Assembly (NCBI RefSeq): GCF_000143415.4
Contig: NW_003314340.1
Location: forward strand, 193,141 to 257,140
Direction: 5' to 3'
DNA from: Selaginella moellendorffii
Lineage: Eukaryota; Plantae; Lycopodiophyta
DNA length: 64,000 nucleotides
Shown here: one piece after another, positions 3,415 to 51,410 of the stretch
Position numbering within the stretch: the first letter of the stretch is position 1
Layout of the letters: each line of letters begins with the position of its first letter
The notes under the pieces: generated by a model
Told to the model about the DNA's origin: nothing
The model's database searches: none
Seen by the model: only the letters and a program-made list of their open reading frames with translations
Program-made: the position numbers and the translations under genes

Positions 3415-3811
3415 TGTAAGCTCCTGAGTTTGGACTTCCCGGGAGGTCACCCAGCCCAGTACTATTCAAACCCAAGGACACTTAACTCCAACTATCCCAA
3501 GACCCTTAACCGATTGGAAAAGGGGGTGCACTCTTGTTCATGGGCCCTTTCCCTCTATATTTGAACCCCATGGATCGTCTCTCAAGTCATTCCCTTTGGT
3601 TGCTTACAATCCACCACGCTTCCCTGCAAGTTCACGCCCTCGTGAATGGAAGCTGAGAGCCGCAGCTCTCCCGAGAGCCTCGCTCTCTTGACACCCTACC
3701 CCTCGGGTCGAGCCCAGCGAGAGCAAACTGGACCAGCCAGATGTCCATCAACATGTGGTGTGAATCCCTTAGCCAACCAACAGAGTCGGACCCGAGACAG
3801 CTCCGATACCA
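3415..3811 (-). mobile_element. Cassandra-like TRIM unit (one 194-bp LTR with a 5S rRNA-derived segment, PPT, non-coding internal part, Met-tRNA PBS) inserted into chromovirus pol
   Basis: LTR 3415-3608 is bounded by TGTAAGC...GCTTACA. The minus strand of 3432-3487 reads AGTTAAGTGTCCTTGGGTTTGAATAGTACTGGGCTGGGTGACCTCCCGGGAAGTCC, matching the plant 5S A-box/IE/C-box region. PPT-like sequence at 3609-3625; PBS TGGTATCGGAGC at 3800-3811. Confidence 0.85.
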
Positions 3812-5290: not shown

Positions 5291-5338
5291 TCAAAACGAG
5301 CTAAATCAAAAAACGAAAAAGCACAATCTGAATCAAAC

Positions 5339-5725
5339 TGTCAAGACCCCTGACAAGATCAAGACTGGAAAATGCAAAAAGACAAAGAGAAAAGCTAGTG
5401 GAAACAAAGAAGAGGCCTTAGACTGGCGTTGATTCAGATTGTGGAGAAATGGAACAAGGCTAACCTATATATACTATAGGTTGATGAAGCTCCACCACTC
5501 TTGGATCGAGGACGACCTAAATATAGCTGAGGTCGAGGAGGCGCCACATCATCATCAGGAATGTGGTTCGAGACTCAGGAATCGGGAAGTGTCTCGAGAG
5601 TCAGGAATAGGGAAGTGTCTCGAGAGTCAGGAATAGGGAAGTGTCTCGAGAGTCAGGAATGTGGTTTGCAGGTCAGGAATCCGGCGAGAGTCAAGAATGT
5701 GGCAAGAATTGGGGGATTCCTAACA
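5339..5725 (-). repeat. 5' LTR of the chromovirus with internal 26-bp tandem repeats
   Basis: TGTCAAG...CCTAACA ends; about 3 copies of GAGAGTCAGGAATAGGGAAGTGTCTC at ~5571-5660; TATA-like run at 5466-5473. Confidence 0.9.
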
Positions 5726-24765: not shown

Positions 24766-25377
24766 GCTCTAAGCTCCGCTGGCAAAACCCTAAACCTAAG
24801 CATTCGTTAAAAGAGAATAAAAGAGAATAAAATCAAAAGATCCTTTCATTCCAAAAGTTGGTGTATCAAACCTTGTCGTGCTTTAATTTAGCGACTGTAT
24901 TATTAATCAAATTCCATGCCGCATTAACATAATGTTCTTGCGCAGCACGGCAGAGAAGAGCTATCCATGATTAGAGTGGGACAAAGGCCGTACCACAGAG
25001 TTCCTTTTTCTCCACCAAAAAAATGGAAAATATATCCCGTATAATCTTTTCGCCCTTCTTTACTCATTTTTTGCGCGCAGTGGCAAGTTGCGTCCCAGCG
25101 CACAGCAATTTGTCTGCTGCTAGAGTACTTGATCGTGCAAAAATTTCCACTCGCGAGCCAGAAGATCATCGATCGATGGATCCCTTCACCACTAGGTAAA
25201 ATCAATCGAGCCCGGAGATTGATGATCTAAGCATTTCCTATACATCGATGCCAAATCCAGTGACGCATAACACTCGCAAGCCTTTATCCTCGTCCCGGCC
25301 AGATCTGGGCGATTAGTGATCTCAGTGCAAACAGTCCACAATACGGCCCCACCATGCCTCCAAGGGAGTGCGCAGGG

Positions 25378-25521
25378 GTATATCCACCGCGATCGGAATA
25401 TTCCACCGCGACAGGGATATTCCCTGCTTGAGTTTGGCGGGCGCACACGGGCAAGCTCTGGTCTGGGGATCGCACCAACACGTGCAGTCGCTACCTCCGT
25501 CCAAGATCCCTTTGAATATTC
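25378..25521. promoter_or_regulatory. Cluster of four P1BS-like (GNATATNC) motifs
   Basis: GTATATCC 25378-25385, GAATATTC 25396-25403, GGATATTC 25415-25422 and GAATATTC 25514-25521, between the divergent AGM and bHLH genes. Confidence 0.55.
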
Positions 25522-27050
25522 ACTCCTTAAGAAGATTTTTCTCTGGTCACTTTCTCTCGCGGCATGCTTTTCTTTCCACTTATCAAAACTCTTTGGAAAA
25601 GTTTGGCTATGGAGCTTTGACCCGGCGTTCCCGCCTTCCTACCGTGACGATCACTTATACAAAAATTAGGGTTTATAAAAAAAATCCATCACCCATGTTA
25701 GCCAAACCAGATGCCCGATCTGTTGCTGTCAATGACTTCTCTCTTTCTCCAATCTTATCCCTCGAGATCCGTTCGTCCCGGGGAATCGAACCCTCCCCAC
25801 TCCCACCTTGCCGTACGCGTTCCAGGGGCGTACGAAACCTTGCCCCGGGTGTTCCCGCAACCCGGAACAAGGGGCATCAATCGTCCTGGAGGATGGAATC
25901 TACTCTCCATTCTCTGGCGGATTCGCTCTCGTTGTTTAACCGGGAGCTTAAAGGTGGGTGTCCAGTTAGCGCAATATTTTATTTGGTGGCCGGGCCAATC
26001 ATCGTCTCTTTCCTCCATAGCGCTCTCTCTCTCTCTCTTTCTCTTCCATTCATTCTTCTTCTTCTTCTTCTTCTCCTTCCACCAGAGCGCTACTTGCAAA
26101 GCCACCTCTCAATCCCTCTTTTTTGTGACTTGGGACTGCCACTGGCGCTGGCGACCGCTGGCTGGGAGTGTGTGATTGGGATGATGACGGCAGCGATCGA
26201 TGATTCGCTTGATTGGCTGCCCGATTTCCCCGAGAATCGTTCGCTACCGGGCAATGCATCATCCATCCATCGCCCTCAAGCACAAGGAGATTCTAGTGTG
26301 TTGCGTTGCGCGCGCTCATTCCTAGTTCTTCCTTGATTCTCTTCTTCCAAGAATTTCTTTCCTCGTTCTCAGCTTCGTCGTTACTGTGCTGGGCAAGTTG
26401 CAAGCTTCCAGAGCTTCGATTTCTCAGATCTTCCCACTCCCAAAATCTCTCCTTCGTTTTATCTTCTGTCGCCCTCGCCCAAGATCTTCTGGGCAGTGGT
26501 TCCCCTCAATCCCGGCAAGAACACCTCTTCCTCTATCTCCTCTCCCGCTAGATCAATCGCCCAAAGCTCGCTCGGTGTGTTCTTCCTCTTCGCTCTCCCG
26601 CTTGTGTTCTTCCCAAATTTGCCCTTTCCAATCGATTGCCCGGACAGCGATGGATACGGCAGAGTCGCGCAGGGATCTCATCGAAGATTTGGAGCAGTAA
26701 GTGTGGGAAATTTCTCTCCTGTGGAGCGATTTCTCGTGGAAGATCTCTCGTGTGTGTGTGAGTTGTGTGCCCCGTTTTCGAGTTCCGTGTGTCCGGTGTG
26801 TCCGGTGTCCCGGTGTCCGAATTTCTCTCGCTACGTAGGCCGCGGTGACAGCGACAAGCCATCGAATTCGCGCGACCGATCCCAAATCCAATCGCCGCAG
26901 CGAAGCCGCGAGAAGAAATCTCCACGCCATCGCCCACAAAACCCATGGATCGATCGATTGGAAGGCTCGCACCTTGGTAGATCTTCCAGGAAGAAGAAGG
27001 GGGCTTTTGGTTTGGGCGCACTGGAGCGATCAATCGGCCGATCGATCGAC

Positions 27051-28745
27051 ATGGGCAGCAAGCAGCAGCAGCAAAACACCCAGCACTTCCAGCGATTGGG
27101 GAATTACAATCCCCACTCCTCGCTCGCCACCGCGGCTTCTTTCAGCTCGCCCAACAAGAAATGGATGCTCAACGCCAAGAACGATGTGGTGGAAGTGGCG
27201 CCGGACCATCTCCACCACGGCTATGGAGACCAATCGCAGTTCCAAGCGATCAATCTCTCCGCCCAGCAGCAGGGATACGTGGGCGAATGTGGGCGAGGAG
27301 GAGGAGGAGGAGGGGGAGGATCTGGAGGATCAGTGTTGATGCGCTACAACTCGGCTCCGAGCTGCCTTTTCTCCGATCTCGACCAGATTGCCAGATCTCT
27401 CAACGAGGCCGCCGCCGCCAGCGCCGCCCCTAGCGCCGCCAATGCGCCGCTCTTCTCCCCCGACGTCCTCCCGCCGCTACCGTCCGCCATGGCCGCGACG
27501 AGCAAGAAAAAGATTGGCAGCCCCACGCACAGCTCCAGCCGCTACTCCGCCCAGAGCTCCACCTCCCTGGGCATGGATTTCAGCGTCATGGATCACCACC
27601 ACCACCACCATCGCCAGCAGCAGAATGGATTCACGGGCTTGCTCACGGGAACATCTTCCAGCACTGCCGCCGCCATCGCCAAGAACACCACGGCGACGCC
27701 ATCGCCAGCACCATCGCCAGCCAATTTGACGCGGCAGAGCAGCTCCCCCGCGAGCTTGCTGTCGCGGCTGGAGATCGATCGCCAGGGGCTGCAGCATGGT
27801 AGCAGCGAGGAGGACAGCCCGCTAGAGATGCGATCGCCCATCACCGATCAAGAGATGATGGTGGCCAGCGTCTCGGGTGCCATGGATTTGGGGGCGGTCT
27901 CTTCCGTGGATTGCGGCTTCTGGGATGGCAGCTCCGCGGCGGCAATGGCTGTCCATCCCGCCGCCGCTCACCATGCCGCGGCGCAGCAGCAGCTCCATGG
28001 CTCGGTGTTCATGGGGAATGGGAATTTGGATCAAGGCGGGCGAAAGAGAATCCGGGACGTGGACATGGACATGTTGGACGCGGCGTTGGATCACAGCAGT
28101 AGTAGCGGCGGTGGTGGCGGAGGTGGTGGCGGTGGCGGCGGCGGAGGTCATGTAAGTTCTTCAAAGTTACCTCTTTCTTCTTTGTTCTTGGAGTGGTTCT
28201 CTATAGCTTTGCTAGAATTCCTTCTTTCTTTCTCGCGAGCGTCCTTGATCGATTCGATCGGATCGATCGACGTCCATTTTTTTTTTTCTTCTTTCTTCTT
28301 CTGATGGAACTTTCATTGCTTGTTTGTTTTCTAGTCCGCTGCATGCTTGATGAAACGGGCTTGCTACTGCAAGCAAGCTCGCCGGGACTGATTGATGAAG
28401 AGAGTCGGGTTAAAAGGTTGGTTGGATCTTTCTCTCCACTTTTTTCTCCCATTTTTCCGAGACTATCTAAGTTGCTGTTTTGGTAATCTTTGTTTTTGTT
28501 CCTCATGGAAGTTTGGATTCTAACGAGCTTTGTCTCTCTCCTTTTGTTTTCCAGCAGCAGCAGCAGCAGCATCACACGTTGACACGACACTTGAGCTTGC
28601 CGATCTCGACGGGGCGATCGAGTGGCGGATTGCTAGCGGCGGAGAACTTGCTCCAGGATTCGGTGCCTTGCCGGCTTCGAGCAAAGCGAGGGTGTGCTAC
28701 TCATCCACGAAGCATTGCCGAGCGTGTAAGTTGTCACACTATACG

Positions 28746-29873: not shown

Positions 29874-30878
29874 ATGAACGATCTGATGAGCCGCTCCTTC
29901 TCGGGGCCGCGGAGCTACGTGGATTTGCGCCACGATCGCGACCTGGAAGCCGGCGGCGAGACGGAGATGACAGTGGTGGACTCAGAGAGAAATCTGGCGC
30001 TCTTCCTCGAGGAGGCCAACGAGATCCAGGCCAAGATGAAGAGCGTGGAGGGATTGCTCGCGCGCCTCCAGCAGGCCAACGAGGAGAGCAAGAGCATCCA
30101 CAAGGCACAGGCCGTCAAGGCAATCCGGCAACGCATGGACAAGGACGTGGAGCAGGTCCTCAAGCTCGCCAAGTCGATTAAAGCCCAGCTCGAGGAGCTC
30201 GACAAGGCCAACGCCGCCAACCGCAAGATCGCTGGATTTGGAGCCGGCACTCCCACCGATCGAACGAGAACCTCCCTGACCGCGAGCATGAGGAAGAAGC
30301 TCAAGGACATCATGGGCGATTTCCAGGAGCTCCGGCAGAGGATGAAGGGCGAGTACCGCGAGGCGATCGGTCGGCGCTACTTCACGGTCACTGGCACCGA
30401 TCCGGACGAGGAGACGCTGGAGACGATGATCGAGACCGGCGAGAGCGAGACGTTCCTCCAGAGGGCGATCCAGGAGCAGGGGCGCGGCCAGGTGATGGAG
30501 ACGATCCGGGAGATCCAGGAGCGGCACGATGCCGTGCGAGAGATCGAGAAGAACTTGCTGGAGCTCCACCAGATCTTTCTCGACATGGCGGTGCTGGTTG
30601 AGGCGCAGGGCGAGCAGCTCAACAGCATCGAGGATCAAGTCCACCGAGCTTCTTCGTTCGTGGCGAGAGGAACCACGAATCTCCAAGTCGCGAAGAAGCA
30701 CCAGAGGAGCGCCAGGAAGTGGACTTGCATCGGGATCATCATCTTGATCATCGTGGTCATCGTGATCCTGGCACCCATCCTGGTTAGAGCCAGGAACAAC
30801 AGGTCCTCGCCGTCACCATCGCCGAATCCAGTGACACCATCGCCGCCACCACCGGTGGCGCCGCCGCCACCAACTTAG
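29874..30878 (+). CDS. Plasma-membrane Qa-SNARE syntaxin, SYP12 group, intronless, with a Pro-rich C-terminal tail
   Basis: MNDLMSRSF, DRTRTS, RRYFTVTG, ETFLQRAIQEQGRGQV, ELHQIFLDMAVLVEAQGEQL, then a TM helix. Confidence 0.94.
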   Translation: MNDLMSRSFSGPRSYVDLRHDRDLEAGGETEMTVVDSERNLALFLEEANEIQAKMKSVEGLLARLQQANEESKSIHKAQAVKAIRQRMDKDVEQVLKLAKSIKAQLEELDKANAANRKIAGFGAGTPTDRTRTSLTASMRKKLKDIMGDFQELRQRMKGEYREAIGRRYFTVTGTDPDEETLETMIETGESETFLQRAIQEQGRGQVMETIREIQERHDAVREIEKNLLELHQIFLDMAVLVEAQGEQLNSIEDQVHRASSFVARGTTNLQVAKKHQRSARKWTCIGIIILIIVVIVILAPILVRARNNRSSPSPSPNPVTPSPPPPVAPPPPT

Positions 30879-31853: not shown

Positions 31854-33890
31854 TTACAAAGCTTCCATCAATATAACACACCATTGCTTCTCCTTCTCTC
31901 CTTCGCAAGCGTCGAAAACCTTGGCTATGGTGGTGCCAAGCTTCGCGTCTCTCAATCCCTGGAGAAGCATCCTTCTCGCAAATCTAATGGCCTCTTCCAC
32001 ACGCCCGTTCTGGGAAAGCGCGCTCACGATCACGCTCCAGGACACAGCGTTCTTCACCGCGATCTTGTCGAAAGCCTCTCTCGCCTCCGCGCAGCAGCCA
32101 CAGCTCCCATACATCTGGACGAGCGAGTTCCCGACGATGACGTTCGTATCGAGCTTCTTCTCCACGGCCTGGACGTGGATTTCTTTCCCCCGATCCAAGT
32201 CCCTGATGTTCGAGCAGGCCGCTAGAACAGCGACGTAAGTCACCTCGTTGGCTCTCGTCCCCGTCTCCTCCATCTTCCGGAACAGATCGATCGCCTCTCG
32301 AGCGCTGTCGTTGCGAGCACACGCCGTGATCATCGTCGTCCATGTCACGACGTTCTTCCTCCGGATCCCCTCGAAAACTCTCCTGGCATCGCCCAAGCTT
32401 CCACACCTCCCGTAAGAAGTGATGAGCGAGTTTGCGACGTCGGCGGAGCTGCTGCTGTATCCCAGATAGTAAGCTCGCCGGTCGAGCGAATTCACCTCCG
32501 GGAGGCTCGAGCAGGCACCGAGAGCCGCGGCTAGAGCGACGTGATCCAGCTTGATACCTTCCAAGTCCATTCTCCGGAAGATCACCAGTGCCTGCTTGAG
32601 CTGGCCGTGCCGAGAGAACGCCGAGAGCATGCTCGTCCAGAAGAGAAGACTATCGGATGGAGCTCTTTCGAAGACGGCCTTTGCGCTGTCGAGACTTCCA
32701 CACTTGCTATACATGTTGATCAGCCCCGCCCCGATGCTTTCGCTGGATTCAAGCCCGCTCACGACGACGTGACCATGGATCTCTCGTCCGTCTTCGAGCA
32801 AACCAGCCTTGGCACACGCTGCTAGAGCCGAAACATACGTGATCTCGGTCCTCTCCACGCCTACAAATTCCATCTTCCAGTAGAGCTCGAGCGCCTTCTT
32901 CGTGTAGCCGTTCTGGGAGTAAGCCGCTACCATCGAGTTCCACACCGCAGGGCTGCGGTGTTTCATCGAGTTGAAGACCCGCCTCGCGTCTTCCACGCTT
33001 CCACACTGCCCATACATGCTGATGAGCGAAGTTCCCACGGCGTTTAGATCCAGCCCGAGCTCCTGGAGCTTCTCGTGGAGATTCTTCCCTTCTTCCAGCC
33101 CCTGGATCTTGGAGCAAGCACCGAAGATGGTGGCGAAGGTGATCCTGTCGCCCTCGAGACCCTGCTCGAGCATCTCCACGTAGAGCTCCACTGCCTGCTT
33201 GAGATGCCCGAGCTGGGCATAAGCTCCGATGATGGAGTTCCATGAAACCACGTCCCTCTTCTCCATGGTGTCAAACACCCAGCGCGCGTACTGGATGTTG
33301 CCACACTTGCCGTAGAGCGCGATGAGAGAGTTCTCGATCTTGGCGTTGAGCTCTAGATCCAAATCCAGCACCGCGGAGTGGAGCTTCTCCCCTTCGGCCA
33401 GAGATTTCACCGCGCAGCACGCTCGCAGCAAGCTTATGATCGTCACTTCGTCCGGCTTGGTCCCTTCCAGCTGCATCCACCGGAAGATCCCCAGCGCCTG
33501 CCAGGAATCCCCATTCTCTACGTAGGCTGCGATCATGATGCTCCACGAGTAGAGATTCTTCTCGAGGATTCTGTCGAACACCGCGCGAGCGTCGTCCAAA
33601 TGCCCGCATTTGCCATACATCTGGACTGTAAGATTTCCCAGAAACGTGCCCTGGTCCTGCTCCCTCTCCCGGAGCTGGGAGTGGATGCGCTTACCTTGCG
33701 CGAGGTTCCTCGTCCGGCTACATTGCCGGAGAAGCTCCGAGTAGCGCGCGATCTCGATCTCGCTGAATTCCACATCCTCCGAGGCGGGGAGCGCAATCTC
33801 GTGCTGCTGCTGCTGCGCACGAATCGAATCGTAGAGGAATCCTCGGCGCTTGCCCTGGAAAACACCGGCATGGGGCACGAAATACGCCAT
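31854..33890 (-). CDS. PLS-class PPR protein lacking E/DYW
   Basis: 678-aa intronless ORF of P-L-S triplets. Confidence 0.9.
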   Translation of the reverse strand: MAYFVPHAGVFQGKRRGFLYDSIRAQQQQHEIALPASEDVEFSEIEIARYSELLRQCSRTRNLAQGKRIHSQLREREQDQGTFLGNLTVQMYGKCGHLDDARAVFDRILEKNLYSWSIMIAAYVENGDSWQALGIFRWMQLEGTKPDEVTIISLLRACCAVKSLAEGEKLHSAVLDLDLELNAKIENSLIALYGKCGNIQYARWVFDTMEKRDVVSWNSIIGAYAQLGHLKQAVELYVEMLEQGLEGDRITFATIFGACSKIQGLEEGKNLHEKLQELGLDLNAVGTSLISMYGQCGSVEDARRVFNSMKHRSPAVWNSMVAAYSQNGYTKKALELYWKMEFVGVERTEITYVSALAACAKAGLLEDGREIHGHVVVSGLESSESIGAGLINMYSKCGSLDSAKAVFERAPSDSLLFWTSMLSAFSRHGQLKQALVIFRRMDLEGIKLDHVALAAALGACSSLPEVNSLDRRAYYLGYSSSSADVANSLITSYGRCGSLGDARRVFEGIRRKNVVTWTTMITACARNDSAREAIDLFRKMEETGTRANEVTYVAVLAACSNIRDLDRGKEIHVQAVEKKLDTNVIVGNSLVQMYGSCGCCAEAREAFDKIAVKNAVSWSVIVSALSQNGRVEEAIRFARRMLLQGLRDAKLGTTIAKVFDACEGEKEKQWCVILMEAL

Positions 33891-33964: not shown

Positions 33965-34340
33965 ACAGGTTTCTCTTCGATTTCTCCTCTCTTCCATGGC
34001 GCGCGTCGGCTCCACGGTGCTGGAGCCAGAGAAAATCGGTGGCCTAGACGGAGATGGTACGACAGTGATGATCTTCGCAGAAATCGACGTTCTGGCTGAT
34101 AGAGCGAGAATCAGGCCAAAGGACAGGATAGAATCACCATATCCAGCGCGTTTTCCATGGCAAGGAGATCTCCAATTGCACACACGAAGTAGACGCGTGC
34201 CAAGGTCCAGCTGATCTGCCATGTTTTTACGGTGACTGGTGTTCTTAGCAGCGGATCGTTTGATGTTGTTCTTGCCGATTGGTTTTCTGTTGCCGAAGGG
34301 GCAACTCGACTACATGATCCACGAAGAATGCGAGGTAGAA
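33965..34340 (+). pseudogene. Fragmentary copy of the unknown gene at 41015-42126
   Basis: Shares segments such as CTTCGATTTCTCCTCTC, GACAGTGATGATCTTCGCAGAAATCG, AGAATCAGGCC..GGACAGGATAGAAT and TGGCAAGGAGATCTCCAATTGCACA with 41230-41930. Confidence 0.75.
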
Positions 34341-34754
34341 ATACTGAGCATTCGGTACGCAGCCTAAGCATATAGGATATAATCCTTATATCAAGCAACA
34401 AGCTGTGAGTCCTGGCAGGGCAGCTTTCAGAGCTCCTAGGCCTAAGGCCCTAGGTCTGCGTGCATTATGTGTTCTAATGTGGAGTTGACCTTACTGCGGA
34501 AAAGCAAAGTTAATTTGCTCGTAGGCCAATGGTGGCGAATCGTAGATAGGAGACTTGAGAGAGTAGGATCTTGAGTTGCATAGAGTTGTCAAAAAAGTTT
34601 AGAAATAGTACTGAAATCTTACTGCATGAGTGTACGACCAATGGCTTTCCCCAAAAGGAAAAGATTGTACTCGTAATGGTTTGAAACGAATTGAAGGATT
34701 GTATCTACAAAAACAGCAAGCTCCCAGAAGTGCTGTGTGGGGCGAAAAAGAGCG

Positions 34755-36526
34755 ATGATCAAACTCTGGTTTGGGAAGCACAAAGGAAAAGCTTTGCAAG
34801 ATGTTCCTAAGGATTACTTAGAATGGATGGCCAAAAAAATGAGTGGTGAAAGAATTGGAATGCTTGCTAAGCAGGTTTTGGATGGAGGACCCATTAACGC
34901 TGGAAGTTGTGTCGGGCAGTCTTCTCCAATCTCTTGGATTTTCCTTCTTGGGCGCTACTCGGAGAAGCTCGAGATGGCGAGGAAGATCTTCAGGATGATG
35001 CCTGCTCTCGATCGCACCTCCGCCACAATGATGCTGTCCATATTCGCCCGTCACGAGTGCATAGAGGAGGCCAGGGATTTGTTCGACAAAATGCCAGAGA
35101 GGGACCCCATTTCTTGGAATGCAATAGTGGCTGTTACGCGACGGCACATTCTCCGACTGAGGCTCTGGGGATTTTCAATCTGGCACCGCAGTGGAGCAGG
35201 AATGCTTGCATTTCGATGATGGATGTATTCACAGAAGAGTATATGATCCCAGATGCCAAAGATCTGTTCGATTCGATGCAGCAGCAGGACGTCGTGTCGT
35301 GGACAAAGCTCTTAGGTGTTTATGCGCGATCAGGAGATATGAACAAAGCTGTCAGTGCGTTCAATCTCATGCCAGCAAGGGATGCTGTCGCGTCGACTGT
35401 GCTGCTGCGAGGATTCGTGGAGCTCAACATGATCAGCGAAGCGGAAGGCGTCTTCCAGGCGATGCCGGAGAAAGACATCCATGCACACACAGTTCTCGTT
35501 ATGGCTTCTGCTGAGGTGGGAGCGGCTACTAGCTTGCAAATGGAGGAGGCCAGCAAGGCGGTCCTCATGGAAAAGGATCCTATAGCGTGGAATGCGTTGA
35601 TTGCAGCAAATACTAGGCAAGGGGATCTGCGGTATGCGCTGAAGCTGTTCGAGTCTATGCAGCTCTATGGCGTAAATCCAGATGGTGCAACCATGATATG
35701 TCTTCTGCAGACTTGCAGCCACAGACTTGATGTGCAAACTGGGCGTGAAGTTTTCAGAAGAATGGGTTCGGACTTTGCCATTCCAGCAGAAAGAAAGCAC
35801 TACTGCTGCATGGTTGATTTGCTCGCAAGAGCTGGCCATCTGGATGACGCCGAGGAATTGGTTTGTGCGATGCCATTTATTCCCTCTGCTGCAGAATGGA
35901 ACGCTCTTCTAGGGGCATGCAGAAGCCAGGGCGATGGAAACGTACGGAGAGCAGAAAGAGTAGCGAAGAAAGCAATGGAGTTAAACAACGAGGCTTCCTA
36001 CGTCCTTATGGGAAACATCTACTCGGGCAGCAAGAATGACCAGGTAGATATTGATATGGCTCTGGAATCTCTCAGGGAGAAAATGAGAGAACAAGGTCTA
36101 ACGAGAAAGCCTGCAATAAGCGTTGTCACTGTCGGGAAGGAAACTCATAGGCTTATGGTGGACGACAAGAGTCACCCCAATATCCAAGAAATCAACGCAG
36201 AATTGGCAACGTTAACCAGACTACTTAAAAATGAAGGGTATGTTCCCAGAATTGATCTTGTATTCAGTGGGAAGGAAGAGGTTCTCGCGGAAATGGCTCT
36301 GGCCAAGCACAGCGAGAAATTGGCTTTAGCCTGTGGCATCCTTTACTCCAAGGAAGCAGCAGGGGCGCACATCAGGATTAAAAACAACCTTCGGATGTGT
36401 GGAGATTGCCATCAGATGATGTGTCTTGCTAGCAAGATTTATGATGGGAGGAAAATTACTGTGAAGGATGCTAGCCGAGTCCATTGTTTTGAACAAGGCG
36501 TTTGTTCCTGCGAGAACAACTGGTGA
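34755..36526 (+). pseudogene. PPR-E-DYW gene with an N-terminal FGKHKG module; single frameshift near 35134
   Basis: ORF 34737-35219 (LWFGKHKGKALQDVPKDYLEWM, then PPR) continues in ORF 34907-36526 (PPR, E, KPAIS, HSEKLA, CGDCH, CSCENNW). The frames join at ...NAIVA/YATAH by comparison with the next gene. Confidence 0.8.
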
Positions 36527-36632
36527 ATCAACAAGAGAGTAAATATAAAGAAAAGATAAATAATGTTTTTTTACTTCTAATATAACAAAAAACGAATTTA
36601 TTTTTGTGTTCCTAATACGATTCTATTGGGGC

Positions 36633-38888
36633 ATGTCTCATCGTGTGGTCTCAGAGACTATCGTCCCCTTCGGTAAGCACAAAGGTAAGTCGCTCATAGA
36701 TGTTGAGGAGAAGTATCTTAAATGGATGGCACAAGCATTTCCACCGACTTCCAAATGGGCGAAACTTGCAAAGCTGGCCCTAGATCATCATCGTCAAACT
36801 TCTTCAAGCAATAAACTAGGAGATGTGGTCCTCCAATTTGGGAAGCACAAAGGGAAGGCACTGAAAGAGGTTCCCAAGTCGTACTTAAGCTGGATGGCTA
36901 TCAAGATGGCTGGTGAGAATGTGGGGGTTACGGCGCAAAGATTTCTTGATGGATGCAACATGGACATCATCCCTGATTTGGCTCCAGATGAGAGACAACA
37001 AATGTTCCGTTCTACTGGTTTGATCCAGAAGATGGGGTCTACTGGTGAAGTGAAACAAGCCAAAGCTTTGTTTGATGATATGCCTCGAACAGATGCAGCA
37101 GCCTGGAATGCCATGATCACTTGTTATGGCCAGAATGGATACATTGCAGAAGCAAAGGAGTGTTTTGATGCAATGCCCTGTGACAAAACCAAGTTTTCAT
37201 GGTTTGCACTATTTGGGGCTTATCATCGCAAAGATTTGGTGGAGGAAGCAACTGAACTGTTTCACCAGATGCCACGGAGAGACCAAATGGTATGGATCAC
37301 TCTGCTTCGGCTTCATTCACAGAAGCTTGACATGTTGAAAAAGATCTTCCAGATTATGCCGTTTCACGATTTAACGTCGTCTACTTTGATTCTGAGCGCT
37401 TATTCCAGCCACGAATACTTTGAAGAAGCTAAAAATTTGTTCGACAAAATGCCAGAAAGAGATTCGGTATCTTGGAATGCAATGCTTGCAGCATATGCCA
37501 ATTCAGGGCATGGTTCTGAAGCACATGAGCTGTTCAAACTGGCCCCGCACTGGAACAGAAGCATTTGCCTTTCTATAATAAAGGTCTACGCAGAAGACTA
37601 CATGCTTCAAAATGCAGAGAGCTTGTTCCACTCAATGCTGCAGTGCGACATAGTCTCATGGACCAAGTTCATGGATGTTTGTGCTCGATGTGGTGATATG
37701 GAGAAAGCAAATGAAGTCTTCAGATTAATGCCTGCCACAGACATTGTAGCATGGACAGTGATGCTGGGAGGTTATGCCGGACGGAACATGCTGAATGAAG
37801 CAAAGCTAATCTTTGAGGAAATGCCTGAGAAGGACACGCATGCCTATACTATATTCCTCATGGCCTGTGCTGAAGAAAGTGGGAATGTGAAGGAGAAGGA
37901 TATGGAAGCCTTCATGGATATGGCTGAAGCGGATACAGTTGCGTGGAATTCTCTGCTTGCAGCAAATGCCAGGGATGGCCAGTTGCAACTTGTAGCGAAA
38001 GTGTTCGAGTCAATGCAGTTACAGGGCGCAAGTGCAGACAGTATTTCCTTCGTGTGCATCCTACAAGCTTGTAGTCACAATGCCAAGGTGCAATTGGGGC
38101 GCGATTTCTTCAGAAGTATGGGTTTGGATTACGGCATTGGAGCGGAAAGGAAACACTATTGCTGCATGGTTGACTTGCTTGCCAGATCTGGGCATTTGGA
38201 CGATGCAGAAGAATTGATATCCAGCATGCCTTTTCATCCTTCGGCTGCGGAATGGAATGCTCTTCTAGGTGCATGCAGGAACCAGAAGAAAGAAGGCTCA
38301 GATCGAGCGGAAAGAGCAGCAAAACATCTAATGGAGCTCAGAAATGAGGCATCTTATGTGCTCTTAGGCAATGTCTATGCAAATAGGCGTGTTGACTTGG
38401 TTGACTGCAATTCCCACCCAGTCAACGTAGACATGGCTCTTGAGTCTTTGAGGGAGAGCATGAGACAACGGGGTTTTAGGAGGAAACCAGGCATAAGTAC
38501 CGTCAACTTTGGTAAAGGGACATACACTTTTGTGGTTGGTGATAATCACCCTGAGATTAATGCAGAGCTTGAAAGGTTGACCGGGCTGTTAAGAGCAGCG
38601 GGTTATAAGCCAAAGACTGAAGTTTCGTTTTGTGGTGGTGATCAGAAAGAGAAAGAAGAGCTCCTTTGTCAACATAGTGAAAAACTAGCACTTGCATTTG
38701 GGCTGCTGTCCACTCAAGAAGGGGGGGATGAAATTATACGGATAACAAAGAACTTGAGAATGTGTTATGACTGCCATGATGCTACTAGGGTGATATCTGG
38801 ATTGGTGAAAAGAAAGATCGTTGTGAAAGATGCTAATAGGTTGCATAGATTTGAGAATGGCATGTGCTCCTGTGGTGATTTTTGGTAA
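36633..38888 (+). CDS. PPR-E-DYW cytidine deaminase-type protein with two N-terminal FGKHKG (DUF3820/ExoX-C-like) modules
   Basis: Intact intronless ORF: PFGKHKGKSLIDVEEKYLKWM and QFGKHKGKALKEVPKSYLSWM, short PPR array, E domain, KPGIS, HSEKLALAFG, NLRMCYDCH, CSCGDFW. Confidence 0.9.
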   Translation: MSHRVVSETIVPFGKHKGKSLIDVEEKYLKWMAQAFPPTSKWAKLAKLALDHHRQTSSSNKLGDVVLQFGKHKGKALKEVPKSYLSWMAIKMAGENVGVTAQRFLDGCNMDIIPDLAPDERQQMFRSTGLIQKMGSTGEVKQAKALFDDMPRTDAAAWNAMITCYGQNGYIAEAKECFDAMPCDKTKFSWFALFGAYHRKDLVEEATELFHQMPRRDQMVWITLLRLHSQKLDMLKKIFQIMPFHDLTSSTLILSAYSSHEYFEEAKNLFDKMPERDSVSWNAMLAAYANSGHGSEAHELFKLAPHWNRSICLSIIKVYAEDYMLQNAESLFHSMLQCDIVSWTKFMDVCARCGDMEKANEVFRLMPATDIVAWTVMLGGYAGRNMLNEAKLIFEEMPEKDTHAYTIFLMACAEESGNVKEKDMEAFMDMAEADTVAWNSLLAANARDGQLQLVAKVFESMQLQGASADSISFVCILQACSHNAKVQLGRDFFRSMGLDYGIGAERKHYCCMVDLLARSGHLDDAEELISSMPFHPSAAEWNALLGACRNQKKEGSDRAERAAKHLMELRNEASYVLLGNVYANRRVDLVDCNSHPVNVDMALESLRESMRQRGFRRKPGISTVNFGKGTYTFVVGDNHPEINAELERLTGLLRAAGYKPKTEVSFCGGDQKEKEELLCQHSEKLALAFGLLSTQEGGDEIIRITKNLRMCYDCHDATRVISGLVKRKIVVKDANRLHRFENGMCSCGDFW

Positions 38889-38919
38889 TTGACAACCAGT
38901 CACTTACAGAGGCCAGTAC

Positions 38920-38993
38920 TGTCTGAACCCAGGTTCGAACTGGGGACCTCTAGTGTGTGAGACTAGTGTGATAACCAACTACACCATCCAGAC
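38920..38993 (-). tRNA. tRNA-Val(CAC)
   Basis: GTCTGGATGGTGTAGTTGGTTATCACACTAGTCTCACACACTAGAGGTCCCCAGTTCGAACCTGGGTTCAGACA folds into a cloverleaf with anticodon CAC and A/B boxes. Confidence 0.93.
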
Positions 38994-40712
38994 ATGTACA
39001 ATTAATCAATAAATAATTGTTAAAATTTTTAACAAACTTAAGTAGTTCTATAGAAGCATATTATTTGAATAAATTCATTTCTCCTACTTAACAATACTAA
39101 AATATTTGTGCACTATGCAAACCCACTTAATTTGCTTTGTAAAAGTAATATTTTATTGTTTTTGTTATTAATGCTATCTAGAATATTAAAAATATAATAG
39201 AATTGTGTATTTTTATAACTAAAAAATATTATGAAATAGATAATTTATTAAATATATCCAAGAATTTTATATATACCCTAAAATTGATAATATAATTTAT
39301 TCTAAACTATTAAGTTTTTATTTCAAGCATATAATAATTCAAAAATATAAATAATTTTTAAATATAAACAACTATCCTATAATATGCAGTATGCTCTCTA
39401 AAGACCATGTTATATTAGTGATAAGTAAGAAATATTACTATTAAATTTTAATTAATAGCAAAACCATTACGAATATCTTAAAATATACTAACATAATTAA
39501 CTATTTAATAGAAGTGAATTTATTTTTTCATATACAGTGATAGTAACCAAATTCTTTATATTTTTTATTAAAATAATTTTTGATTTAGAAAAATTATATA
39601 AGGAATAGAATATATAAGTATATTCTAGGATATTAATTAAATGATTGTGACTTTCCACAATTATACATTTTTACTTTTTTATAATTTTTACTTCACTTTA
39701 ATAATAACAAATAAAATATATTAAACTATCCAATATTGTAGTTGTCAATCTTTTAGATCTTTATAGACCGCTAAAAAGATTTATCCACCTACATAAATTC
39801 TAAACCTTAAATTTAATTTATTAAACTTATGAAAAGAATATTATTGAGCTTTAGAATTTTACATTCAATTTTTTTCTATAATCAATGTCTGAAATTTCAT
39901 TTACTGAAATATAAATAAATTCTTTCTTTGGCATAATACCAAAATAAATCCATCTTTAATAAGAAAATAATGTAATTTTTATAATAATTTTTACATTTAA
40001 TATAAATATTTACTTTAATAAAAATTATATATTTTTTATAGTTTAAATAATTAATAGGTTAAGGTATTTTAAGTTATATAAAAATGATTAAATTTTTATT
40101 AGAGATTGTTTTTCTTAATACATAATTTTAAGATTAAATTTACTTTATATGTATAATAATTTTTATATTATATGCAAAAATGATTGGTTTACTTTCAAAA
40201 CTAAAATGGGAGTATAACAAAAACCTTAGATAAGCAAACAAGCAAATAAAAATTACAAATAAATGAAATTCATAAATGACATGCAGAAGGGTATAGAGAT
40301 AACAAACAAAAAAATGAATGCAATAGTTGTAAAATAAAACAAAAACCTCATATTATATTATTGTCAAATAAACATAGAGAAAATAAATCTAAATAGTGTT
40401 TAATGAAAAGCACTTTAACCAAATATTATTGTGCCATAGTTCAAAATGTTTTATAATTTAAAAGAAACTAAAAGATATGAGTGTCTCCCTCTAATTTAAA
40501 GTATAGTATTACAAGTAATTTCATAATTAAAACGTCCAAAATTACTAAAAAAGAAAAAGAAAAGAAAATGTGCATCTACCACCAATTAATTTACTATATT
40601 AGAAAAATTAACAGAGAAATTTTAAAAGCGAAAAATCACAATTGTTAGATTGACATATATCCTAGAATATACCTAGAGATTTTTAATATATTCCCAAAAA
40701 TAAAATACTAAC

Positions 40713-41014: not shown

Positions 41015-42126
41015 ATGAGCAGTGGGCGCGGCAGCTACTTCCCGAAATGCAGGAAGGACGCGCAATGCAAGTGCTCGATGTGTGTGGATAGCTTGAATGC
41101 TACTCGAGATCTTCGCCCCAGCGGCTCCTCTTCTAGGCGAGGAATGCTTGGGCCTCTCAGAAATGCCCTCAGCAGAGCATTTGGATCCCCTCTTCCTTCA
41201 CCTGGAGATCAAAGGTTTAGTAACCCCTCTCTCTTCGATTTCTCCTCTCCGAGTGTTTCTTCCACGGCGCGCGGCGGCTCCGCGGTCCTGGAGCCAGTCT
41301 TTGAAGAGATTGCGGCAGAGAAATCGGTGGCCTCCTCGAAGAGGGATTCCTTCCCCAGATCTAGACGGAGATGGCTCCTCTGGGTGTTAGCGGTGGCCAC
41401 GGCAGTGACGATCTTCGCAGAAATCGTTGCGCCGGTGATCCTGGCTCGCCAATTTCGAGCCCATCTCAGCCCTGGAGCAGTGATCGAAATGGCCACCGCG
41501 TCGAGAGCTAGAATCAGGCCCGCGGACAGGATAGAATTCCTCCAGCACAGGATCCAGCGCGTGTTTCGTGGCAAGGAGATCTCCAATTGCACAGGGAGCT
41601 CCACGAAGTGGACGCTTGCCGAGGTAGACCTCCCTCCTCTCCTTTTGGAAAACTCTTTTGATCTGCGATGCTTCCACAGGATGGAGCATTGATCCACTCG
41701 AGATGCCGCCTCTACTCGTCCCCCGCGGAAGAGCTCTCCATCTGGGGGTACCCGATCGTCACAGCCGGTGTTCTTGGCAGGAGACCCGCGGATCGTTTGA
41801 TGTTTGTTCTTGCCGGCCGAGTGATCGAGGTACTGCTTTGCTTCCTTTCCTTCTTTTATGATCGATCCATGGTTTTCTCATGCCAGTGGAAGGAGGGACA
41901 ACTTGACTACACGATCCACGAAGAAGGCGAGTGGTGGAACCACCATCGCTGGGCAGCCTCGGTGATCCATCTCGACAACAACACTTGGATCGCGCAGTAC
42001 AGCGCTGGAAGCATTGATGCGTGGAGTTTTCTTGCGGGCGCTGGTTACATGACAAAGAGGATCGTCAATTCCTGTTTAAAGTATCGCTTCACATTTCCTT
42101 CCACTGTATTGACAATTCCAACGTAG
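41015..42126 (+). CDS. Conserved plant protein of unknown function with an N-terminal Cys motif and one TM segment; exons ~41015-41623, 41680-41829, 41887-42126
   Basis: YFPKCRKDAQCKCSMCVDSLNATRDL, hydrophobic WLLWVLAVATAVTIFAEI, SRCRLYSSPAEELSIWGYP, WAASVIHLDNNTWI; GT-AG introns keep the frame. Confidence 0.75.
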
Positions 42127-49839: not shown

Positions 49840-51410
49840 TTAGGGCTTGACCATGTTGGCTAGAAGTGAGAGCCACGAAGACGAGCTATCCCCATCTATA
49901 CGGAGGAGATCCCTGGCCACCACCACTCCCCGCGCGACATCCTCGTGAGTCCTACACGCCGCCATCAAGCTCACCCTGGCCGCGGCGTCGCCCGGGAAGG
50001 GCATCGCCTTGAGCAGCTCCTGGGCGTCGCCCAATCGCCCGCACCGCGCCAGGACGTCGATCACACTGCTGTAGTGATCGTGGCTCGGGGAGTCGATCGT
50101 CCCGGCGAAATCGCCGCTCGCGATCGACGCGAAGCAGCAGCACGCGGCGCGCGAATCGCCGCCGTGGCTCAGCGCCGCCAGCACGCTCTTGATCGTCGTG
50201 GCGTCCGCGGCCACGCCCTCGAGCAGCATCTCCTGGAAGAGATCTAGCGCAGCGGCGCCGCCTGGCCGCCGCCCATACGCCGCCACCATCGCATTCCACG
50301 ACGCGGGATCCTTCTCGGGCATGGCGTCGAAGAACACCCTCGCGCGATCAATGTGGCCGGATTGGGAGAAGATCGCGACGGCGGCGGTGAGGGTGATGAG
50401 ATCCCAGGCGGGCATCCGGTGGAGGAGGAGATCCGAACTCTCGAAGCTCTGGGCGCTGGCGGCGAGCATCGCGTTCCAGGAGGCGATGTTCTTCCCGGGC
50501 ATCGCGACAAAGATCTTGCGCGCGGCGGCGGCGGAGTCTCGCGCATGTGCTCGCAGCAGCGCTGTCCACGACACGATGCTCCACTGCGGCATCTTGTGGA
50601 AGATGGCAGTGGCGGCGCCAAGGTGGCCGGAGTCGCCATAGCCGCCCACCATCGCCGTCCACGCCGCCACGCTCCGGATCTCCGCGAGGGAATCGAATGC
50701 GTTCTTGGCGGCCTCGAGCTGGCTGATTTGGATGTGTTTTTGCAGCGTTGCGAGGTTGGAGACGCTGTTCCAGGCGGGCATTTTATCGCGGATCGCTAGA
50801 AACTCTTGGTTTTCTTCTCTAGAGGCATTTGCTTGGAGAAGGCACGTCCAGCTCACAATGTCTCGGTTGGTCATCTCGTCAAAAAGGCATCTTGCGTCAT
50901 TAACAAGGCCTCGGTCTCCTAGAGCGGCTAGAACAGTGTTGCAGGACACGGAGTCTTTAACCGGCATCTTAGAGAACAAATCCTTCATTTTTTGCAGATG
51001 CCCGTGCACGGCATATGCTGCAAGCATGGCATTCCATGACACTTGATCGTACATGGGCATTCTTTGATAGATTAGCCCAACTTGTGAGAAGCAGTCTCTT
51101 GTTATCATGGTGTTCCAGGAAACGAGACTTTCAGGGCATCACATAAAAAATCTCCTGGGCTTTAAGTGTTTGCCCGCACTTGGCATATGCTAGGAGGAGA
51201 ATGTTACACAAGATTGCGTTCCACTGCGGCGAGGCGTTGAACATTTCTATGAGATTTTCGAGGTAACCATTGTCTCCGTACATTTTAAGCATGACGCCCC
51301 ACGTCACGGCGTTCTTTTGTTGCATATCATCAAAAGAAGACTTTGCCAGAGAAAAATGCCCATTATGGGCATAAGTTACTAGCAGAAAATTCCTCGACTT
51401 TAGCATAACC
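49840..51410 (-). pseudogene. PPR (short-motif-rich, E-type) gene, broken near 51110-51131
   Basis: ORFs 51131-51424 and 49840-51108 are both PPR-like; degenerate E domain HYSSVIDVLARCGRLGDA; no DYW. Confidence 0.75.

What the first reader, a model, noticed from the sequence alone, without database searches (positions are those of the whole stretch)
36633..38888. DYW RNA-deaminase PPR protein fused to two N-terminal FGKHKG (DUF3820/ExoX-C-like) modules and apparently lacking a transit peptide
Seen: the ORF starts MSHRVVSETIV-PFGKHKGKSLIDVEEKYLKWMAQAFPPTSKWAKLAKLAL, repeats the module (VLQFGKHKGKALKEVPKSYLSWMAIK), then runs through PPR motifs, an E domain and a DYW domain with intact HxE and CxxC. 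Known: PLS-E-DYW proteins are organellar C-to-U editing factors and normally start with a transit peptide. The '(M)PFGKxKG...P..YL.W' module is the signature of the DUF3820/QSregVF_b/ExoX C-terminal-like domain of bacterial and phage nucleases and helicases; I also recall a similar module in a small uncharacterised plant protein. I know of no description of it joined to a PPR-DYW. Inference: a new editing-factor architecture with an extra nucleic-acid- or partner-binding unit. The module begins ~11 residues after the ATG and only ~106 bp separate this gene from the upstream stop, so the protein may act outside organelles.
Basis: partly seen in the sequence, partly recalled or inferred. Interest (0 to 1): 0.85.

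Follow-up and report, generated by a model that had tools for sequence, protein, structure and literature searches.

The report
RNA-editing PPR-DYW gene with DUF3820 didomain
A spikemoss (Selaginella moellendorffii) gene for an organelle-type C-to-U RNA-editing enzyme really does begin with two copies of a small accessory domain otherwise attached to bacterial, phage and giant-virus DNA/RNA enzymes; the combination recurs in this genome and I found no paper on it, but its role and the protein's location are untested.

Summary
Window 36633-38888 (+) is one intact 751-aa ORF. It holds two N-terminal DUF3820 modules (PF12843, 49.9 bits against a cut-off of 22; PF20600, 38.2 against 26.5). About 13 PPR motifs, E1/E2 and a DYW deaminase with intact HSE and CxDCH follow.

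The window is Selaginella moellendorffii scaffold GL377644.1. The other haplotype carries an intact, gap-free allele, 97% identical. Stranded RNA-seq shows weak + strand transcription from 36760 to 38783.

The fusion is not an artefact:
- The gene just upstream (34755-36526) is a tandem paralog with its own module. It is frameshifted in this haplotype and 5'-deleted in the other.
- Module and body are equally conserved between the two genes (pN 0.27 and 0.28) although synonymous sites are saturated.
- A third Selaginella gene (XP_024524277.1) and a transcript-sized contig from an unidentified organism also start with the module.
- Module 1 fits a "first module" profile and module 2 a "second module" profile, so the didomain came in as a unit.

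No solved structure and no experimental function exist for the domain. I found no paper on the architecture.

The non-organellar idea is not supported: many Selaginella PPR models start without an obvious presequence.

This scan had already reported the same architecture on other DNA of this genome.

The parts
36633..38888 (+). Complete single-exon CDS (751 aa plus stop) of the DUF3820-didomain PPR-E-DYW protein
   Evidence: ORF list. Called as exactly this 751-aa product on GCA_000143415.2 GL377644.1. The allele XP_024536929.1 on the other haplotype is 97% identical with no gaps.
36654..36806 (+). DUF3820 module 1 (aa 8-58): FGKHKG hairpin at 36669-36686, then YLKW and the KWAKLAKLAL helix
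   Evidence: PF12843 best stretch aa 8-38. AF2 pLDDT 94-96 over aa 11-50. Scores 62.9 bits on the 'first module' HMM against 42.6 on the 'second'.
36822..36968 (+). DUF3820 module 2 (aa 64-112): FGKHKG at 36837-36854, then SYLSWM and a helix
   Evidence: PF20600 best stretch aa 68-90. Scores 54.7 bits on the 'second module' HMM against 46.0 on the 'first'. Stranded RNA-seq reads cover 36760-36943.
36969..36998 (+). Short linker between the didomain and the PPR tract
   Evidence: pLDDT falls to 56 in the last block of the model, aa 111-120. Motif parse.
36999..38243 (+). PPR tract, about 13 motifs (ten roughly 31-aa S/SS-type, then P2-L2-S2), aa 123-537
   Evidence: PF01535 171.6 bits and PF13041 155.2 bits. 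Manual motif parse with position 5 and last residues. The best non-Selaginella relatives are At4g02750- and At1g56690-like proteins.
38244..38483 (+). E1/E2 motifs (aa 538-617). E2 carries an insertion shared with the upstream paralog
   Evidence: PF20431 35.2 bits. Alignment A2.
38484..38885 (+). PG box and DYW cytidine-deaminase domain (aa 618-751): HSE at 38673-38681, CYDCH at 38763-38777, CSCGDFW at 38865-38885
   Evidence: PF14432 116.9 bits over aa 657-751. Catalytic and zinc-ligand columns are invariant in A2. Coordinates.
36527..36632 (+). 106-bp AT-rich spacer between the upstream paralog's stop and the ATG
   Evidence: Sequence. Conserved apart from an 18-nt length difference and a few substitutions in the other haplotype. 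No RNA-seq read in the 12% subsample.
34755..36526 (+). Tandem paralog, a pseudogene. One DUF3820 module (34758-34886, MIKLWFGKHKGKALQDVPKDYLEWM...), a shortened PPR tract, E/E+ and DYW. Frameshift at about 35133-35135
   Evidence: tblastn: module 63% identical to target aa 65-107. PF12843 29.7 bits. Body 53% identical to target aa 288-751. Two reading frames joined at about 35134. The other haplotype lacks about 620 bp including the module. + strand RNA reads cover 35472-36207.

Best explanation
This is a real, intact, weakly transcribed nuclear gene of Selaginella moellendorffii. It encodes a PLS/SS-class PPR-E-DYW protein, a site-specific C-to-U RNA-editing factor of the kind that works in mitochondria and chloroplasts. 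It belongs to a small lineage of PPR-DYW genes whose N-terminus is a DUF3820 (QSregVF_b / ExoX-like_C) module, here a complete didomain.

Shown:
- The architecture, with intact PPR, E and DYW catalytic features.
- An intact allele in the second haplotype.
- Protein-level conservation of the module across an old duplication.
- The same module on at least two more PPR-DYW genes.
- The two modules keep the 'first' and 'second' identities of a didomain that is widespread in bacteria, phages, giant viruses, fungi and protists.

Inferred:
- The PPR tract reads the RNA upstream of a target C and the DYW domain deaminates it. This is established knowledge for the family, not tested here.
- The didomain is a non-catalytic accessory unit. 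It is a small basic Gly-rich hairpin plus two helices. Elsewhere it forms the tail of DnaQ-type exonucleases, helicases and RNase H proteins.
- It most likely docks the editing factor onto a partner protein or a nucleic acid in the organelle, for example the nucleoid or RNA-processing machinery. It is unlikely to replace import.
- The didomain was probably gained once, as a unit, from a bacterial or viral type of gene. It was then reduced to one module in some paralogs.
For: Architecture and scores.

Genome identity and independent gene call.

Second-haplotype allele: intact, 97% identical, gap-free. The surrounding alignment has 76 gap columns in 4229.

Transcription: stranded RNA-seq reads from 36760 to 38783 all have the first mate on the - strand, which means + strand RNA. 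No splice joint was seen.

Tandem paralog: it carries the module (63% identical) and a body 53% identical. pS is 0.73 (saturated) and pN 0.27 in the module, against pN 0.28 in the body.

Other genes with the module at the very start:
- XP_024524277.1 / XP_002971768.2 start MHTILPFGKHKG, with in-frame stops upstream and PF12843 at 33 bits.
- Logan contigs from SRR5499394 and ERR2020652 encode a 777-aa PLS-DYW protein starting ...RRIPFGTHKGKSL, after a 5' leader with an in-frame stop.

The didomain as a unit: 81 of 264 local domain hits span 70 or more query residues. Alignment A1. First- and second-module HMM scores.

Accessory, non-catalytic nature:
- Matches to the tails of epsilon-like and ExoX NCBIfam models and to phrog_192.
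- Atlas shape matches to phage ResIII/Helicase_C and giant-virus RNase H clusters that carry PF12843.
- ExoX residues 1-167, without this tail, stay active (PMC3753628).

Model quality: AF2 mean pLDDT 86.5.
Against: - No experiment exists on the module in any organism, and no solved structure: best VIA Z 5.0, Foldseek E above 1.
- Organelle import is assumed from the family, not shown. There is no recognisable presequence ahead of the module.
- Expression is very low: 49 reads in 12% of three runs. No raw RNA read covers module 1.
- dN/dS between the alleles is 0.58 (22 non-synonymous against 10 synonymous changes), so constraint may be relaxed.
- The neighbouring paralog is a pseudogene in both haplotypes.
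- The called gene range for the allele on the other haplotype puts 984 nt, containing the upstream paralog's ORF, ahead of the ATG. If that is the real mRNA, translation would suffer.
Confidence: 0.6

Rival explanations
1. Non-organellar editing factor. Because the didomain sits where a transit peptide should be, the protein stays in the cytosol or nucleus and acts on nuclear-encoded RNA or on DNA.
For: The module starts 9-12 residues after the ATG in this gene. It starts 2-5 residues after the ATG in XP_024524277.1 and in the upstream paralog. In-frame stops lie upstream in three genes. The first 40 residues carry 4 acidic residues.
Against: Other annotated S. moellendorffii PPR proteins (P0194, P0207, P0254, P0258) also start without an obvious presequence. 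From general knowledge, no plant PPR-DYW protein is known to edit outside organelles. The module-bearing P0186 has an Arg/Ser/Leu-rich leader with one acidic residue in 40. A Euglena didomain protein has a presequence-like leader ahead of the didomain. No localisation predictor was available.
Confidence: 0.1
2. Decaying gene. The fusion is real but this copy, like its neighbour, is drifting towards a pseudogene, and the module no longer does anything.
For: dN/dS between alleles is 0.58 overall and 0.46 in the didomain. Read depth is very low. The upstream paralog is frameshifted in one haplotype and 5'-deleted in the other. Several PPR motifs carry non-canonical residues at position 5 and the last position.
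Against: Both alleles keep a 2256-nt ORF with no indel or stop, while the flanks are full of gaps. All catalytic DYW residues and both FGKHKG...YL.W motifs are intact, and the five allelic changes in the didomain avoid them. The module is as conserved as the body over a duplication old enough to saturate synonymous sites.
Confidence: 0.15
3. The module has been co-opted as an unconventional import signal. The Lys-rich hairpin and amphipathic helix would be recognised by the import machinery and either cleaved or retained.
For: The module sits at the extreme N-terminus in all four genes seen. The first 20 residues carry a net positive charge, 4 K/R against 1 D/E. The leader of P0186 resembles a presequence.
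Against: The module is predicted to fold stably (pLDDT 94-96). It keeps the same conserved motif as bacterial and phage homologs that need no import. It contains acidic residues. A didomain would be redundant for targeting.
Confidence: 0.1
4. Gene-model artefact. Translation really starts at a downstream Met (for example M124 or M133) and the modules lie in the 5' UTR, or the join is an assembly error.
For: No raw RNA-seq read covers 36576-36759 in the subsample. An older annotation gave only a 395-aa product (EFJ22471.1).
Against: The module is conserved at the amino-acid level although synonymous sites are saturated. Two independently assembled haplotypes agree. Contigs of run X1 cover 36619-36775 and carry the other haplotype's variants. 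The same join is seen in two other genes.
Confidence: 0.05

Closest known systems
PLS-class PPR-E-DYW organellar C-to-U RNA-editing factors (At4g02750- and At1g56690-like subgroup with runs of 31-aa S/SS motifs)
   Same: PPR tract, P2-L2-S2, E1/E2, PG box and a DYW deaminase with HxE and CxxCH. 33-37% identity over about 82% of the length to angiosperm At4g02750-like proteins.
   Different: These carry no DUF3820 module. Among the 120 best PPR-DYW relatives, only the Selaginella XP_024524277.1 cluster and the unnamed Logan protein P0186 have one. Here the N-terminus has no obvious presequence.
DUF3820 / QSregVF_b (PF12843) and ExoX-like_C (PF20600) modules of bacterial, phage and giant-virus proteins
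   Same: The FGKHKG...P..YL.W motif occurs twice with the usual didomain spacing. Scores exceed the gathering cut-offs. End-to-end alignment to stand-alone 100-130-aa didomain proteins at 24-40% identity.
   Different: There it stands alone or forms the tail of DnaQ-type exonucleases, ResIII helicases, RNase H or SNF2-like helicases. Here it is N-terminal to an RNA-binding PPR array and an RNA deaminase.
Other S. moellendorffii DUF3820-PPR(-DYW) loci reported by this scan (s1-424077, s1-420497, s1-375031, s1-398941, s1-351525, s1-419455), and XP_024524277.1
   Same: Same genome and same kind of fusion. XP_024524277.1 was checked here.
   Different: Some have FGKYKG-type motifs or a single module. 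Apart from XP_024524277.1, I could not read those loci.
PPR-DYW proteins with an N-terminal OSB-type PDF motif (scan notes s1-361227, s1-353420, s1-355619)
   Same: Another small accessory motif known from nucleic-acid-binding proteins, reported at the N-terminus of Selaginella PPR-DYW genes.
   Different: An unrelated domain. Not examined here.

Membership tests
PPR-E-DYW RNA-editing factor (PLS class) | Tandem PPR motifs | tested here: met
   PF01535 171.6 bits, PF13041 155.2 bits. About 13 motifs parsed.
PPR-E-DYW RNA-editing factor (PLS class) | E1/E2 extension after the PPR tract | tested here: met
   PF20431 35.2 bits against a cut-off of 27.3.
PPR-E-DYW RNA-editing factor (PLS class) | DYW deaminase domain with HxE and CxxCH zinc and catalytic residues and the C-terminal triplet | tested here: met
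   PF14432 116.9 bits. HSEKLA, CYDCH and CSC..W fall in invariant columns of A2. The triplet is DFW instead of DYW.
PPR-E-DYW RNA-editing factor (PLS class) | Import into mitochondria or plastids | not testable with these tools
   No localisation predictor or data. No obvious presequence, but the same holds for other Selaginella PPR models.
PPR-E-DYW RNA-editing factor (PLS class) | Site-specific C-to-U editing activity | not testable with these tools
   Needs the organelle transcriptome and editing-site list, and an assay.
DUF3820 / QSregVF_b (PF12843) | Profile score above the curated gathering threshold | tested here: met
   49.9 bits in the whole protein and 56.5 bits in the first 120 aa, against a cut-off of 22, two stretches.
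ExoX-like_C (PF20600) | Profile score above the curated gathering threshold | tested here: met
   38.2 bits whole protein and 40.3 bits in the first 120 aa, against a cut-off of 26.5, two stretches. Also matches the tail of the NCBIfam ExoX model NF005937, positions 171-217 of 220.
DUF3820 didomain | Two modules at the usual spacing, aligning end to end with didomain proteins; conserved F-G...G and Y..W | tested here: met
   81 didomain-spanning hits. In A1, G14 and G70 are invariant, and Y28, F69, Y84 and W87 are at least 90% conserved. Positional HMMs.
DUF3820 didomain | Shared fold with other family members | tested here: inconclusive
   TM by query 0.40-0.51 to Atlas models of PF12843-bearing clusters. 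No solved structure of the domain exists for comparison.

The most novel reading that the evidence does not exclude
The DUF3820 didomain is a functional adaptor that ties RNA editing to a DNA- or RNA-processing complex, such as the organellar nucleoid or the replication and repair machinery. Alternatively it keeps the enzyme outside organelles. Either way, lycophytes would hold a PPR-DYW deaminase that is recruited by protein docking or acts in a new compartment. The domain came from a bacterial or viral type of gene.
Probability: 0.12. Interest if true: 0.85.

Novelty: new variant of a known kind. Interest (0 to 1): 0.5.

Why it matters
PPR-DYW editing factors are usually seen as self-contained: a PPR tract for recognition and a DYW domain for catalysis. 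They are being engineered as RNA base editors.

A conserved extra N-terminal domain taken from the toolkit of bacterial and viral nucleic-acid enzymes would be a new accessory element for this family. It could point to a partner or a tethering mechanism in the lineage with the heaviest organellar editing known.

It would also give a first eukaryotic, experimentally tractable context for DUF3820. That domain is very widespread and has no known function and no solved structure.

If the protein proved to be non-organellar, that would be a major surprise. The present data do not favour it.

Tried and rejected
**Architecture census**
- The search for homologous proteins restricted to residues 1-115 returned only the query itself, at E 0.001 and at E 10. 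One search was an out-of-range parameter.
- E-values scaled to 5.8 billion sequences are too strict for a 30-50-aa module, so the census could not be completed.
- The 50%-identity representative library did not list XP_024524277.1 among its best 150 hits. Its silence on other PPR fusions therefore means little.

**Structure**
- No solved relative by sequence.
- None by Foldseek against the PDB: best E 1.2.
- None by VIA-align wide: best Z 5.0, myosin VI, 42 residues.
- BFVD gave only weak rows, E 5e-3 or worse.
- The Atlas feature search gave no usable hit.

**Literature**
- DUF3820 with pentatricopeptide: 0 papers.
- DUF3820 alone: 4 unrelated papers.
- QSregVF: 1 unrelated paper.
- PF12843 / PF20600 / ExoX-like: 2 unrelated papers.
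- Selaginella, PPR, DYW and N-terminal domain: 2 papers listed; neither title nor abstract concerns this domain, and I did not read them.
- Gutmann et al. 2020 (Mol Plant) is not held.

**Organism of P0186 / P0272**
- Could not be identified: no paper cites SRR5499394, that accession prefix, or ERR2020652.
- The look-up of scan findings by sequence was blank.

**Other points**
- My recollection that the ExoX tail binds MutL was not supported by the papers I opened. I dropped it.
- The X1 joint 37084 to 38154 has TC..AA ends, comes from one contig and has a 23-nt side. I read it as a chimeric or paralog contig, not an intron.
- I considered a whole-protein AlphaFold run and left it out, because the tool returns no inter-domain confidence.
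Full report
**1. Observation**

The window holds an uninterrupted + strand ORF. Its first ATG is at 36633 and its stop at 38886-38888, giving 751 aa. An in-frame stop lies just upstream; the mechanical ORF begins at a GTG at 36606.

Pfam on the whole protein:

| Family | Bits | Cut-off | Note |
|---|---|---|---|
| QSregVF_b / DUF3820 (PF12843) | 49.9 | 22 | two stretches |
| ExoX-like_C (PF20600) | 38.2 | 26.5 | two stretches |
| PPR (PF01535) | 171.6 | 25 | |
| PPR_2 (PF13041) | 155.2 | 30 | |
| E_motif (PF20431) | 35.2 | 27.3 | |
| DYW_deaminase (PF14432) | 116.9 | 24 | aa 657-751 |

The first 120 residues alone score 56.5 bits (PF12843) and 40.3 bits (PF20600).

A motif parse gives this layout:
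- module 1: aa 8-58
- module 2: aa 64-112
- a short linker
- about 13 PPR motifs: aa 123-537. Ten are roughly 31-aa S/SS-type and are followed by P2-L2-S2.
- E1/E2: aa 538-617
- PG box and DYW domain: aa 618-751

HSEKLA, NLRMCYDCH and H..G.CSC..W fall in columns that are invariant among six PPR-DYW proteins. The preceding ORF stops at 36526, 106 bp before the ATG.

**2. Source and independent copies**

An exact-sequence look-up places the gene on Selaginella moellendorffii assembly GCA_000143415.2, scaffold GL377644.1. There it is already called as this same 751-aa product, with the PF12843 hit on record.

Its 90% cluster holds XP_024536929.1, from scaffold GL377595.1, the other haplotype. This allele is 97% identical over all 751 residues with no gap. 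Both FGKHKG...YL.W motifs are untouched.

At the DNA level the two coding sequences differ by 32 substitutions (22 non-synonymous, 10 synonymous) and no indel. dN/dS is 0.58 overall and 0.46 in the didomain. The surrounding 4.2-kb alignment is 95% identical with 76 gap columns. The ORF is therefore maintained, but under only moderate constraint.

**3. Transcription**

I laid three stranded RNA-seq runs of the same species label (12% of each read) and one set of Logan contigs on 34000-39500.
- 49 reads map in total.
- From 36760 to 38783 every read has its first mate on the - strand. In most stranded libraries this means + strand RNA.
- No splice joint is supported by raw reads.
- No raw read falls in 36576-36759, so module 1 and the transcription start are not covered at this depth.

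Contigs of run X1 cover 36619-36775 and 36832-37219. They carry the other haplotype's variants (K30E, I90V, D111N). X1 is only guessed to be RNA. Its 31 Mb of contigs, against about 200 Mb for the DNA runs, fits a transcriptome, but this is not proof.

The called gene range for the allele on the other haplotype is 3240 bp. It therefore starts 984 nt upstream of the ATG, inside the upstream paralog. The true 5' end remains open.

**4. The neighbour is a paralog with the same module**

tblastn with the N-terminus finds a second module at 34758-34886. It reads MIKLWFGKHKGKALQDVPKDYLEWMAKKMSGERIGMLAKQVLDG and is 63% identical to target aa 65-107. It scores 29.7 bits on PF12843.

This module opens a frame that continues into PPR motifs up to about 35133. 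The homology then continues in another frame to a DYW end at 36526. That second part is 53% identical to target aa 288-751. This tandem paralog therefore has one frameshift. It also lacks module 1 and roughly target aa 108-220.

In the other haplotype about 620 bp, including its module, are missing. It is a pseudogene in both haplotypes, although + strand reads cover 35472-36207.

Between the two genes, synonymous sites are saturated: pS is 0.73 in the module and 0.77 in the body. Non-synonymous divergence is the same in both, pN 0.27 and 0.28. The module has thus evolved as coding sequence under the same protein-level constraint as the rest of the gene. This excludes a UTR or assembly artefact.

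**5. Further members**

Only two clusters among the 120 best full-length relatives carry the motif.
- **XP_024524277.1 / XP_002971768.2** of S. moellendorffii: 888 aa, two haplotypes. It starts MHTILPFGKHKGKSLLEVPESYLRWM, 226 bp after an HSP20 gene, with in-frame stops upstream. PF12843 scores 33 bits.
- **P0186 / P0272**: a 777-aa canonical PLS-E-DYW protein on 2.8-kb Logan contigs from SRR5499394 and ERR2020652. It starts MVSTEVLPARNRRIPFGTHKGKSLRSLPSAYL...KWAQLAEEVL, after a 218-nt leader with an in-frame stop.
  - Its Pfam score is 19.3 bits, just under the cut-off.
  - It scores 34 bits on a first-module HMM built from didomain proteins.
  - Its organism could not be identified.
  - Its PPR backbone is only 31% identical to the target's, so the module sits on at least two very different backbones.

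Notes of this scan list six more DUF3820-PPR loci in this genome. One was followed up with the same conclusion. I could not read those loci. They are leads, not evidence.

**6. What the module is**

A search of 1.84 billion representatives with residues 1-115 gave 239 hits at E 0.001 or better.
- Re-scoring the best 149 locally gave 264 domain matches. Of these, 81 span 70 or more query residues. The two-module unit is therefore a common, pre-existing didomain, and it includes stand-alone 100-130-aa proteins.
- In the 49-sequence alignment A1, G14 and G70 are invariant. Y28, F69, Y84 and W87 are at least 90% conserved.
- I built HMMs from the first and the second modules of the other 48 sequences. 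They score target module 1 at 62.9 against 42.6 bits, and module 2 at 46.0 against 54.7 bits. The didomain was therefore inherited as a unit and was not duplicated inside the plant gene.

Named holders of the module:
- IMG 'DUF3820 family' proteins.
- Dothideomycete and other fungal proteins with several modules.
- A Euglena gracilis 147-aa didomain protein with a presequence-like leader.
- An SNF2-like helicase with three C-terminal modules.
- A phylloxera protein with six modules.

The single closest module is P0131, 72% identical over 32 aa. It lies on a metagenomic contig of small ORFs with a phage integrase.

The module also matches the C-terminal tails of NCBIfam epsilon-like and ExoX models and of phrog_192, 'DNA polymerase exonuclease subunit'.

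AlphaFold with A1 gives mean pLDDT 86.5. Each module is a short hairpin carrying FGKHKG, followed by two helices. A shape search of the ESM Atlas returns PF12843-bearing clusters:
- phage ResIII/Helicase_C helicases (TM by query 0.51),
- stand-alone bacterial proteins,
- ExoX-like_C proteins,
- giant-virus RNase H proteins.

No solved structure matches. This agrees with the ExoX crystal structure, which covers residues 1-167 only; that truncation was still active (PMC3753628). The domain is therefore a recurrent, non-catalytic appendage of nucleic-acid enzymes, and its function is experimentally unknown.

**7. Mechanism**

Best reading, confidence 0.6: this is an organelle-type C-to-U editing factor.
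- Its PPR tract selects the RNA site and its DYW domain deaminates the target C. This is established for the family and inferred here.
- It carries an accessory didomain that most likely docks it to a partner protein or a nucleic acid.
- Several PPR motifs have canonical code pairs (T/D, N/D, N/N) and others do not. No target could be predicted without the organelle sequences.

**8. The 'no transit peptide' inference**

The module does start within 2-14 residues of the ATG in all four genes seen. However, other annotated Selaginella PPR proteins (P0194, P0207, P0254, P0258) also begin directly with PPR motifs. Absence of a recognisable presequence therefore does not discriminate in this genome.

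The RefSeq name 'mitochondrial' comes from homology only. No predictor was available. I put the non-organellar reading at about 0.1. The rival readings are given separately: a decaying gene, the module as an import signal, and a model artefact.

**9. Novelty**

The sequences are public and auto-annotated. No held paper mentions DUF3820, QSregVF or ExoX-like_C together with PPR proteins.

This scan had already found and followed up the same architecture on other DNA of this genome (s1-424077). This locus is a further member of that group, and it is informative in three ways:
- it has the complete didomain;
- it has an intact allele in both haplotypes;
- it has a tandem paralog that shows protein-level constraint on the module.

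I rate it a new variant of a known kind, of moderate interest.

**10.
- The census across plants could not be done with the tools left.
- The 5' end of the mRNA and the protein's location are open.
- No step needed referral.

Noticed in passing
window 34755-36526 (+): Tandem PPR-E-DYW paralog with its own N-terminal DUF3820 module. It is frameshifted at about 35134 in this haplotype, and the other haplotype (L005) lacks about 620 bp of its 5' part. It is annotated only as a 435-aa (this haplotype) or 364-aa (other haplotype) truncated product, yet + strand RNA reads cover it.
   Followed up: yes
L005:4001-7240 (GL377595.1): The called gene range for the allele on the other haplotype extends 984 nt upstream of the ATG and overlaps the upstream paralog. 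This suggests read-through or a transcription start inside the pseudogene.
   Followed up: partly
window 278-2692, 3696-7864, 12616-15840: Fragments of Ty3/gypsy-type retrotransposons, with RT, RNase H and integrase zinc-finger and core domains.
   Followed up: no
window 20306-22570 (-), 31857-33890 (-), 49843-51108 (-): Three more PPR ORFs of 755, 678 and 422 aa. No DYW domain or DUF3820 module was detected in them, so the region is PPR-rich.
   Followed up: partly
window 25368-26336 and 26496-28304 (+): Two long ORFs (322 and 602 aa) in a GC-rich stretch (58%) with no Pfam match. The public annotation calls a 498-aa product of unknown family here.
   Followed up: no
window 29874-30878 (+) and about 41015-42126 (+): An intronless syntaxin/SNARE gene and an ERG2/sigma-1-receptor-family gene flank the PPR cluster.
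   Followed up: no
P0050 (Euglena gracilis EG_transcript_27970), P0128, P0021: DUF3820 didomains or arrays also occur in eukaryotes. A 147-aa Euglena protein has a presequence-like leader, an SNF2-like helicase has a SAP-like motif and three C-terminal modules, and a phylloxera protein has six modules.
   Followed up: partly
L006:562-1035: The non-plant module most similar to module 2 (72% over 32 aa, including the LGDVVL lead-in) lies on a metagenomic contig of small ORFs with a phage integrase. This hints at a phage or bacterial origin.
   Followed up: partly
window 37084 to 38154: One X1 contig joins these two points, skipping 1069 nt, with non-canonical TC..AA ends and only 23 nt on one side. 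It is probably a chimera between similar PPR repeats or paralogs and not an intron.
   Followed up: no
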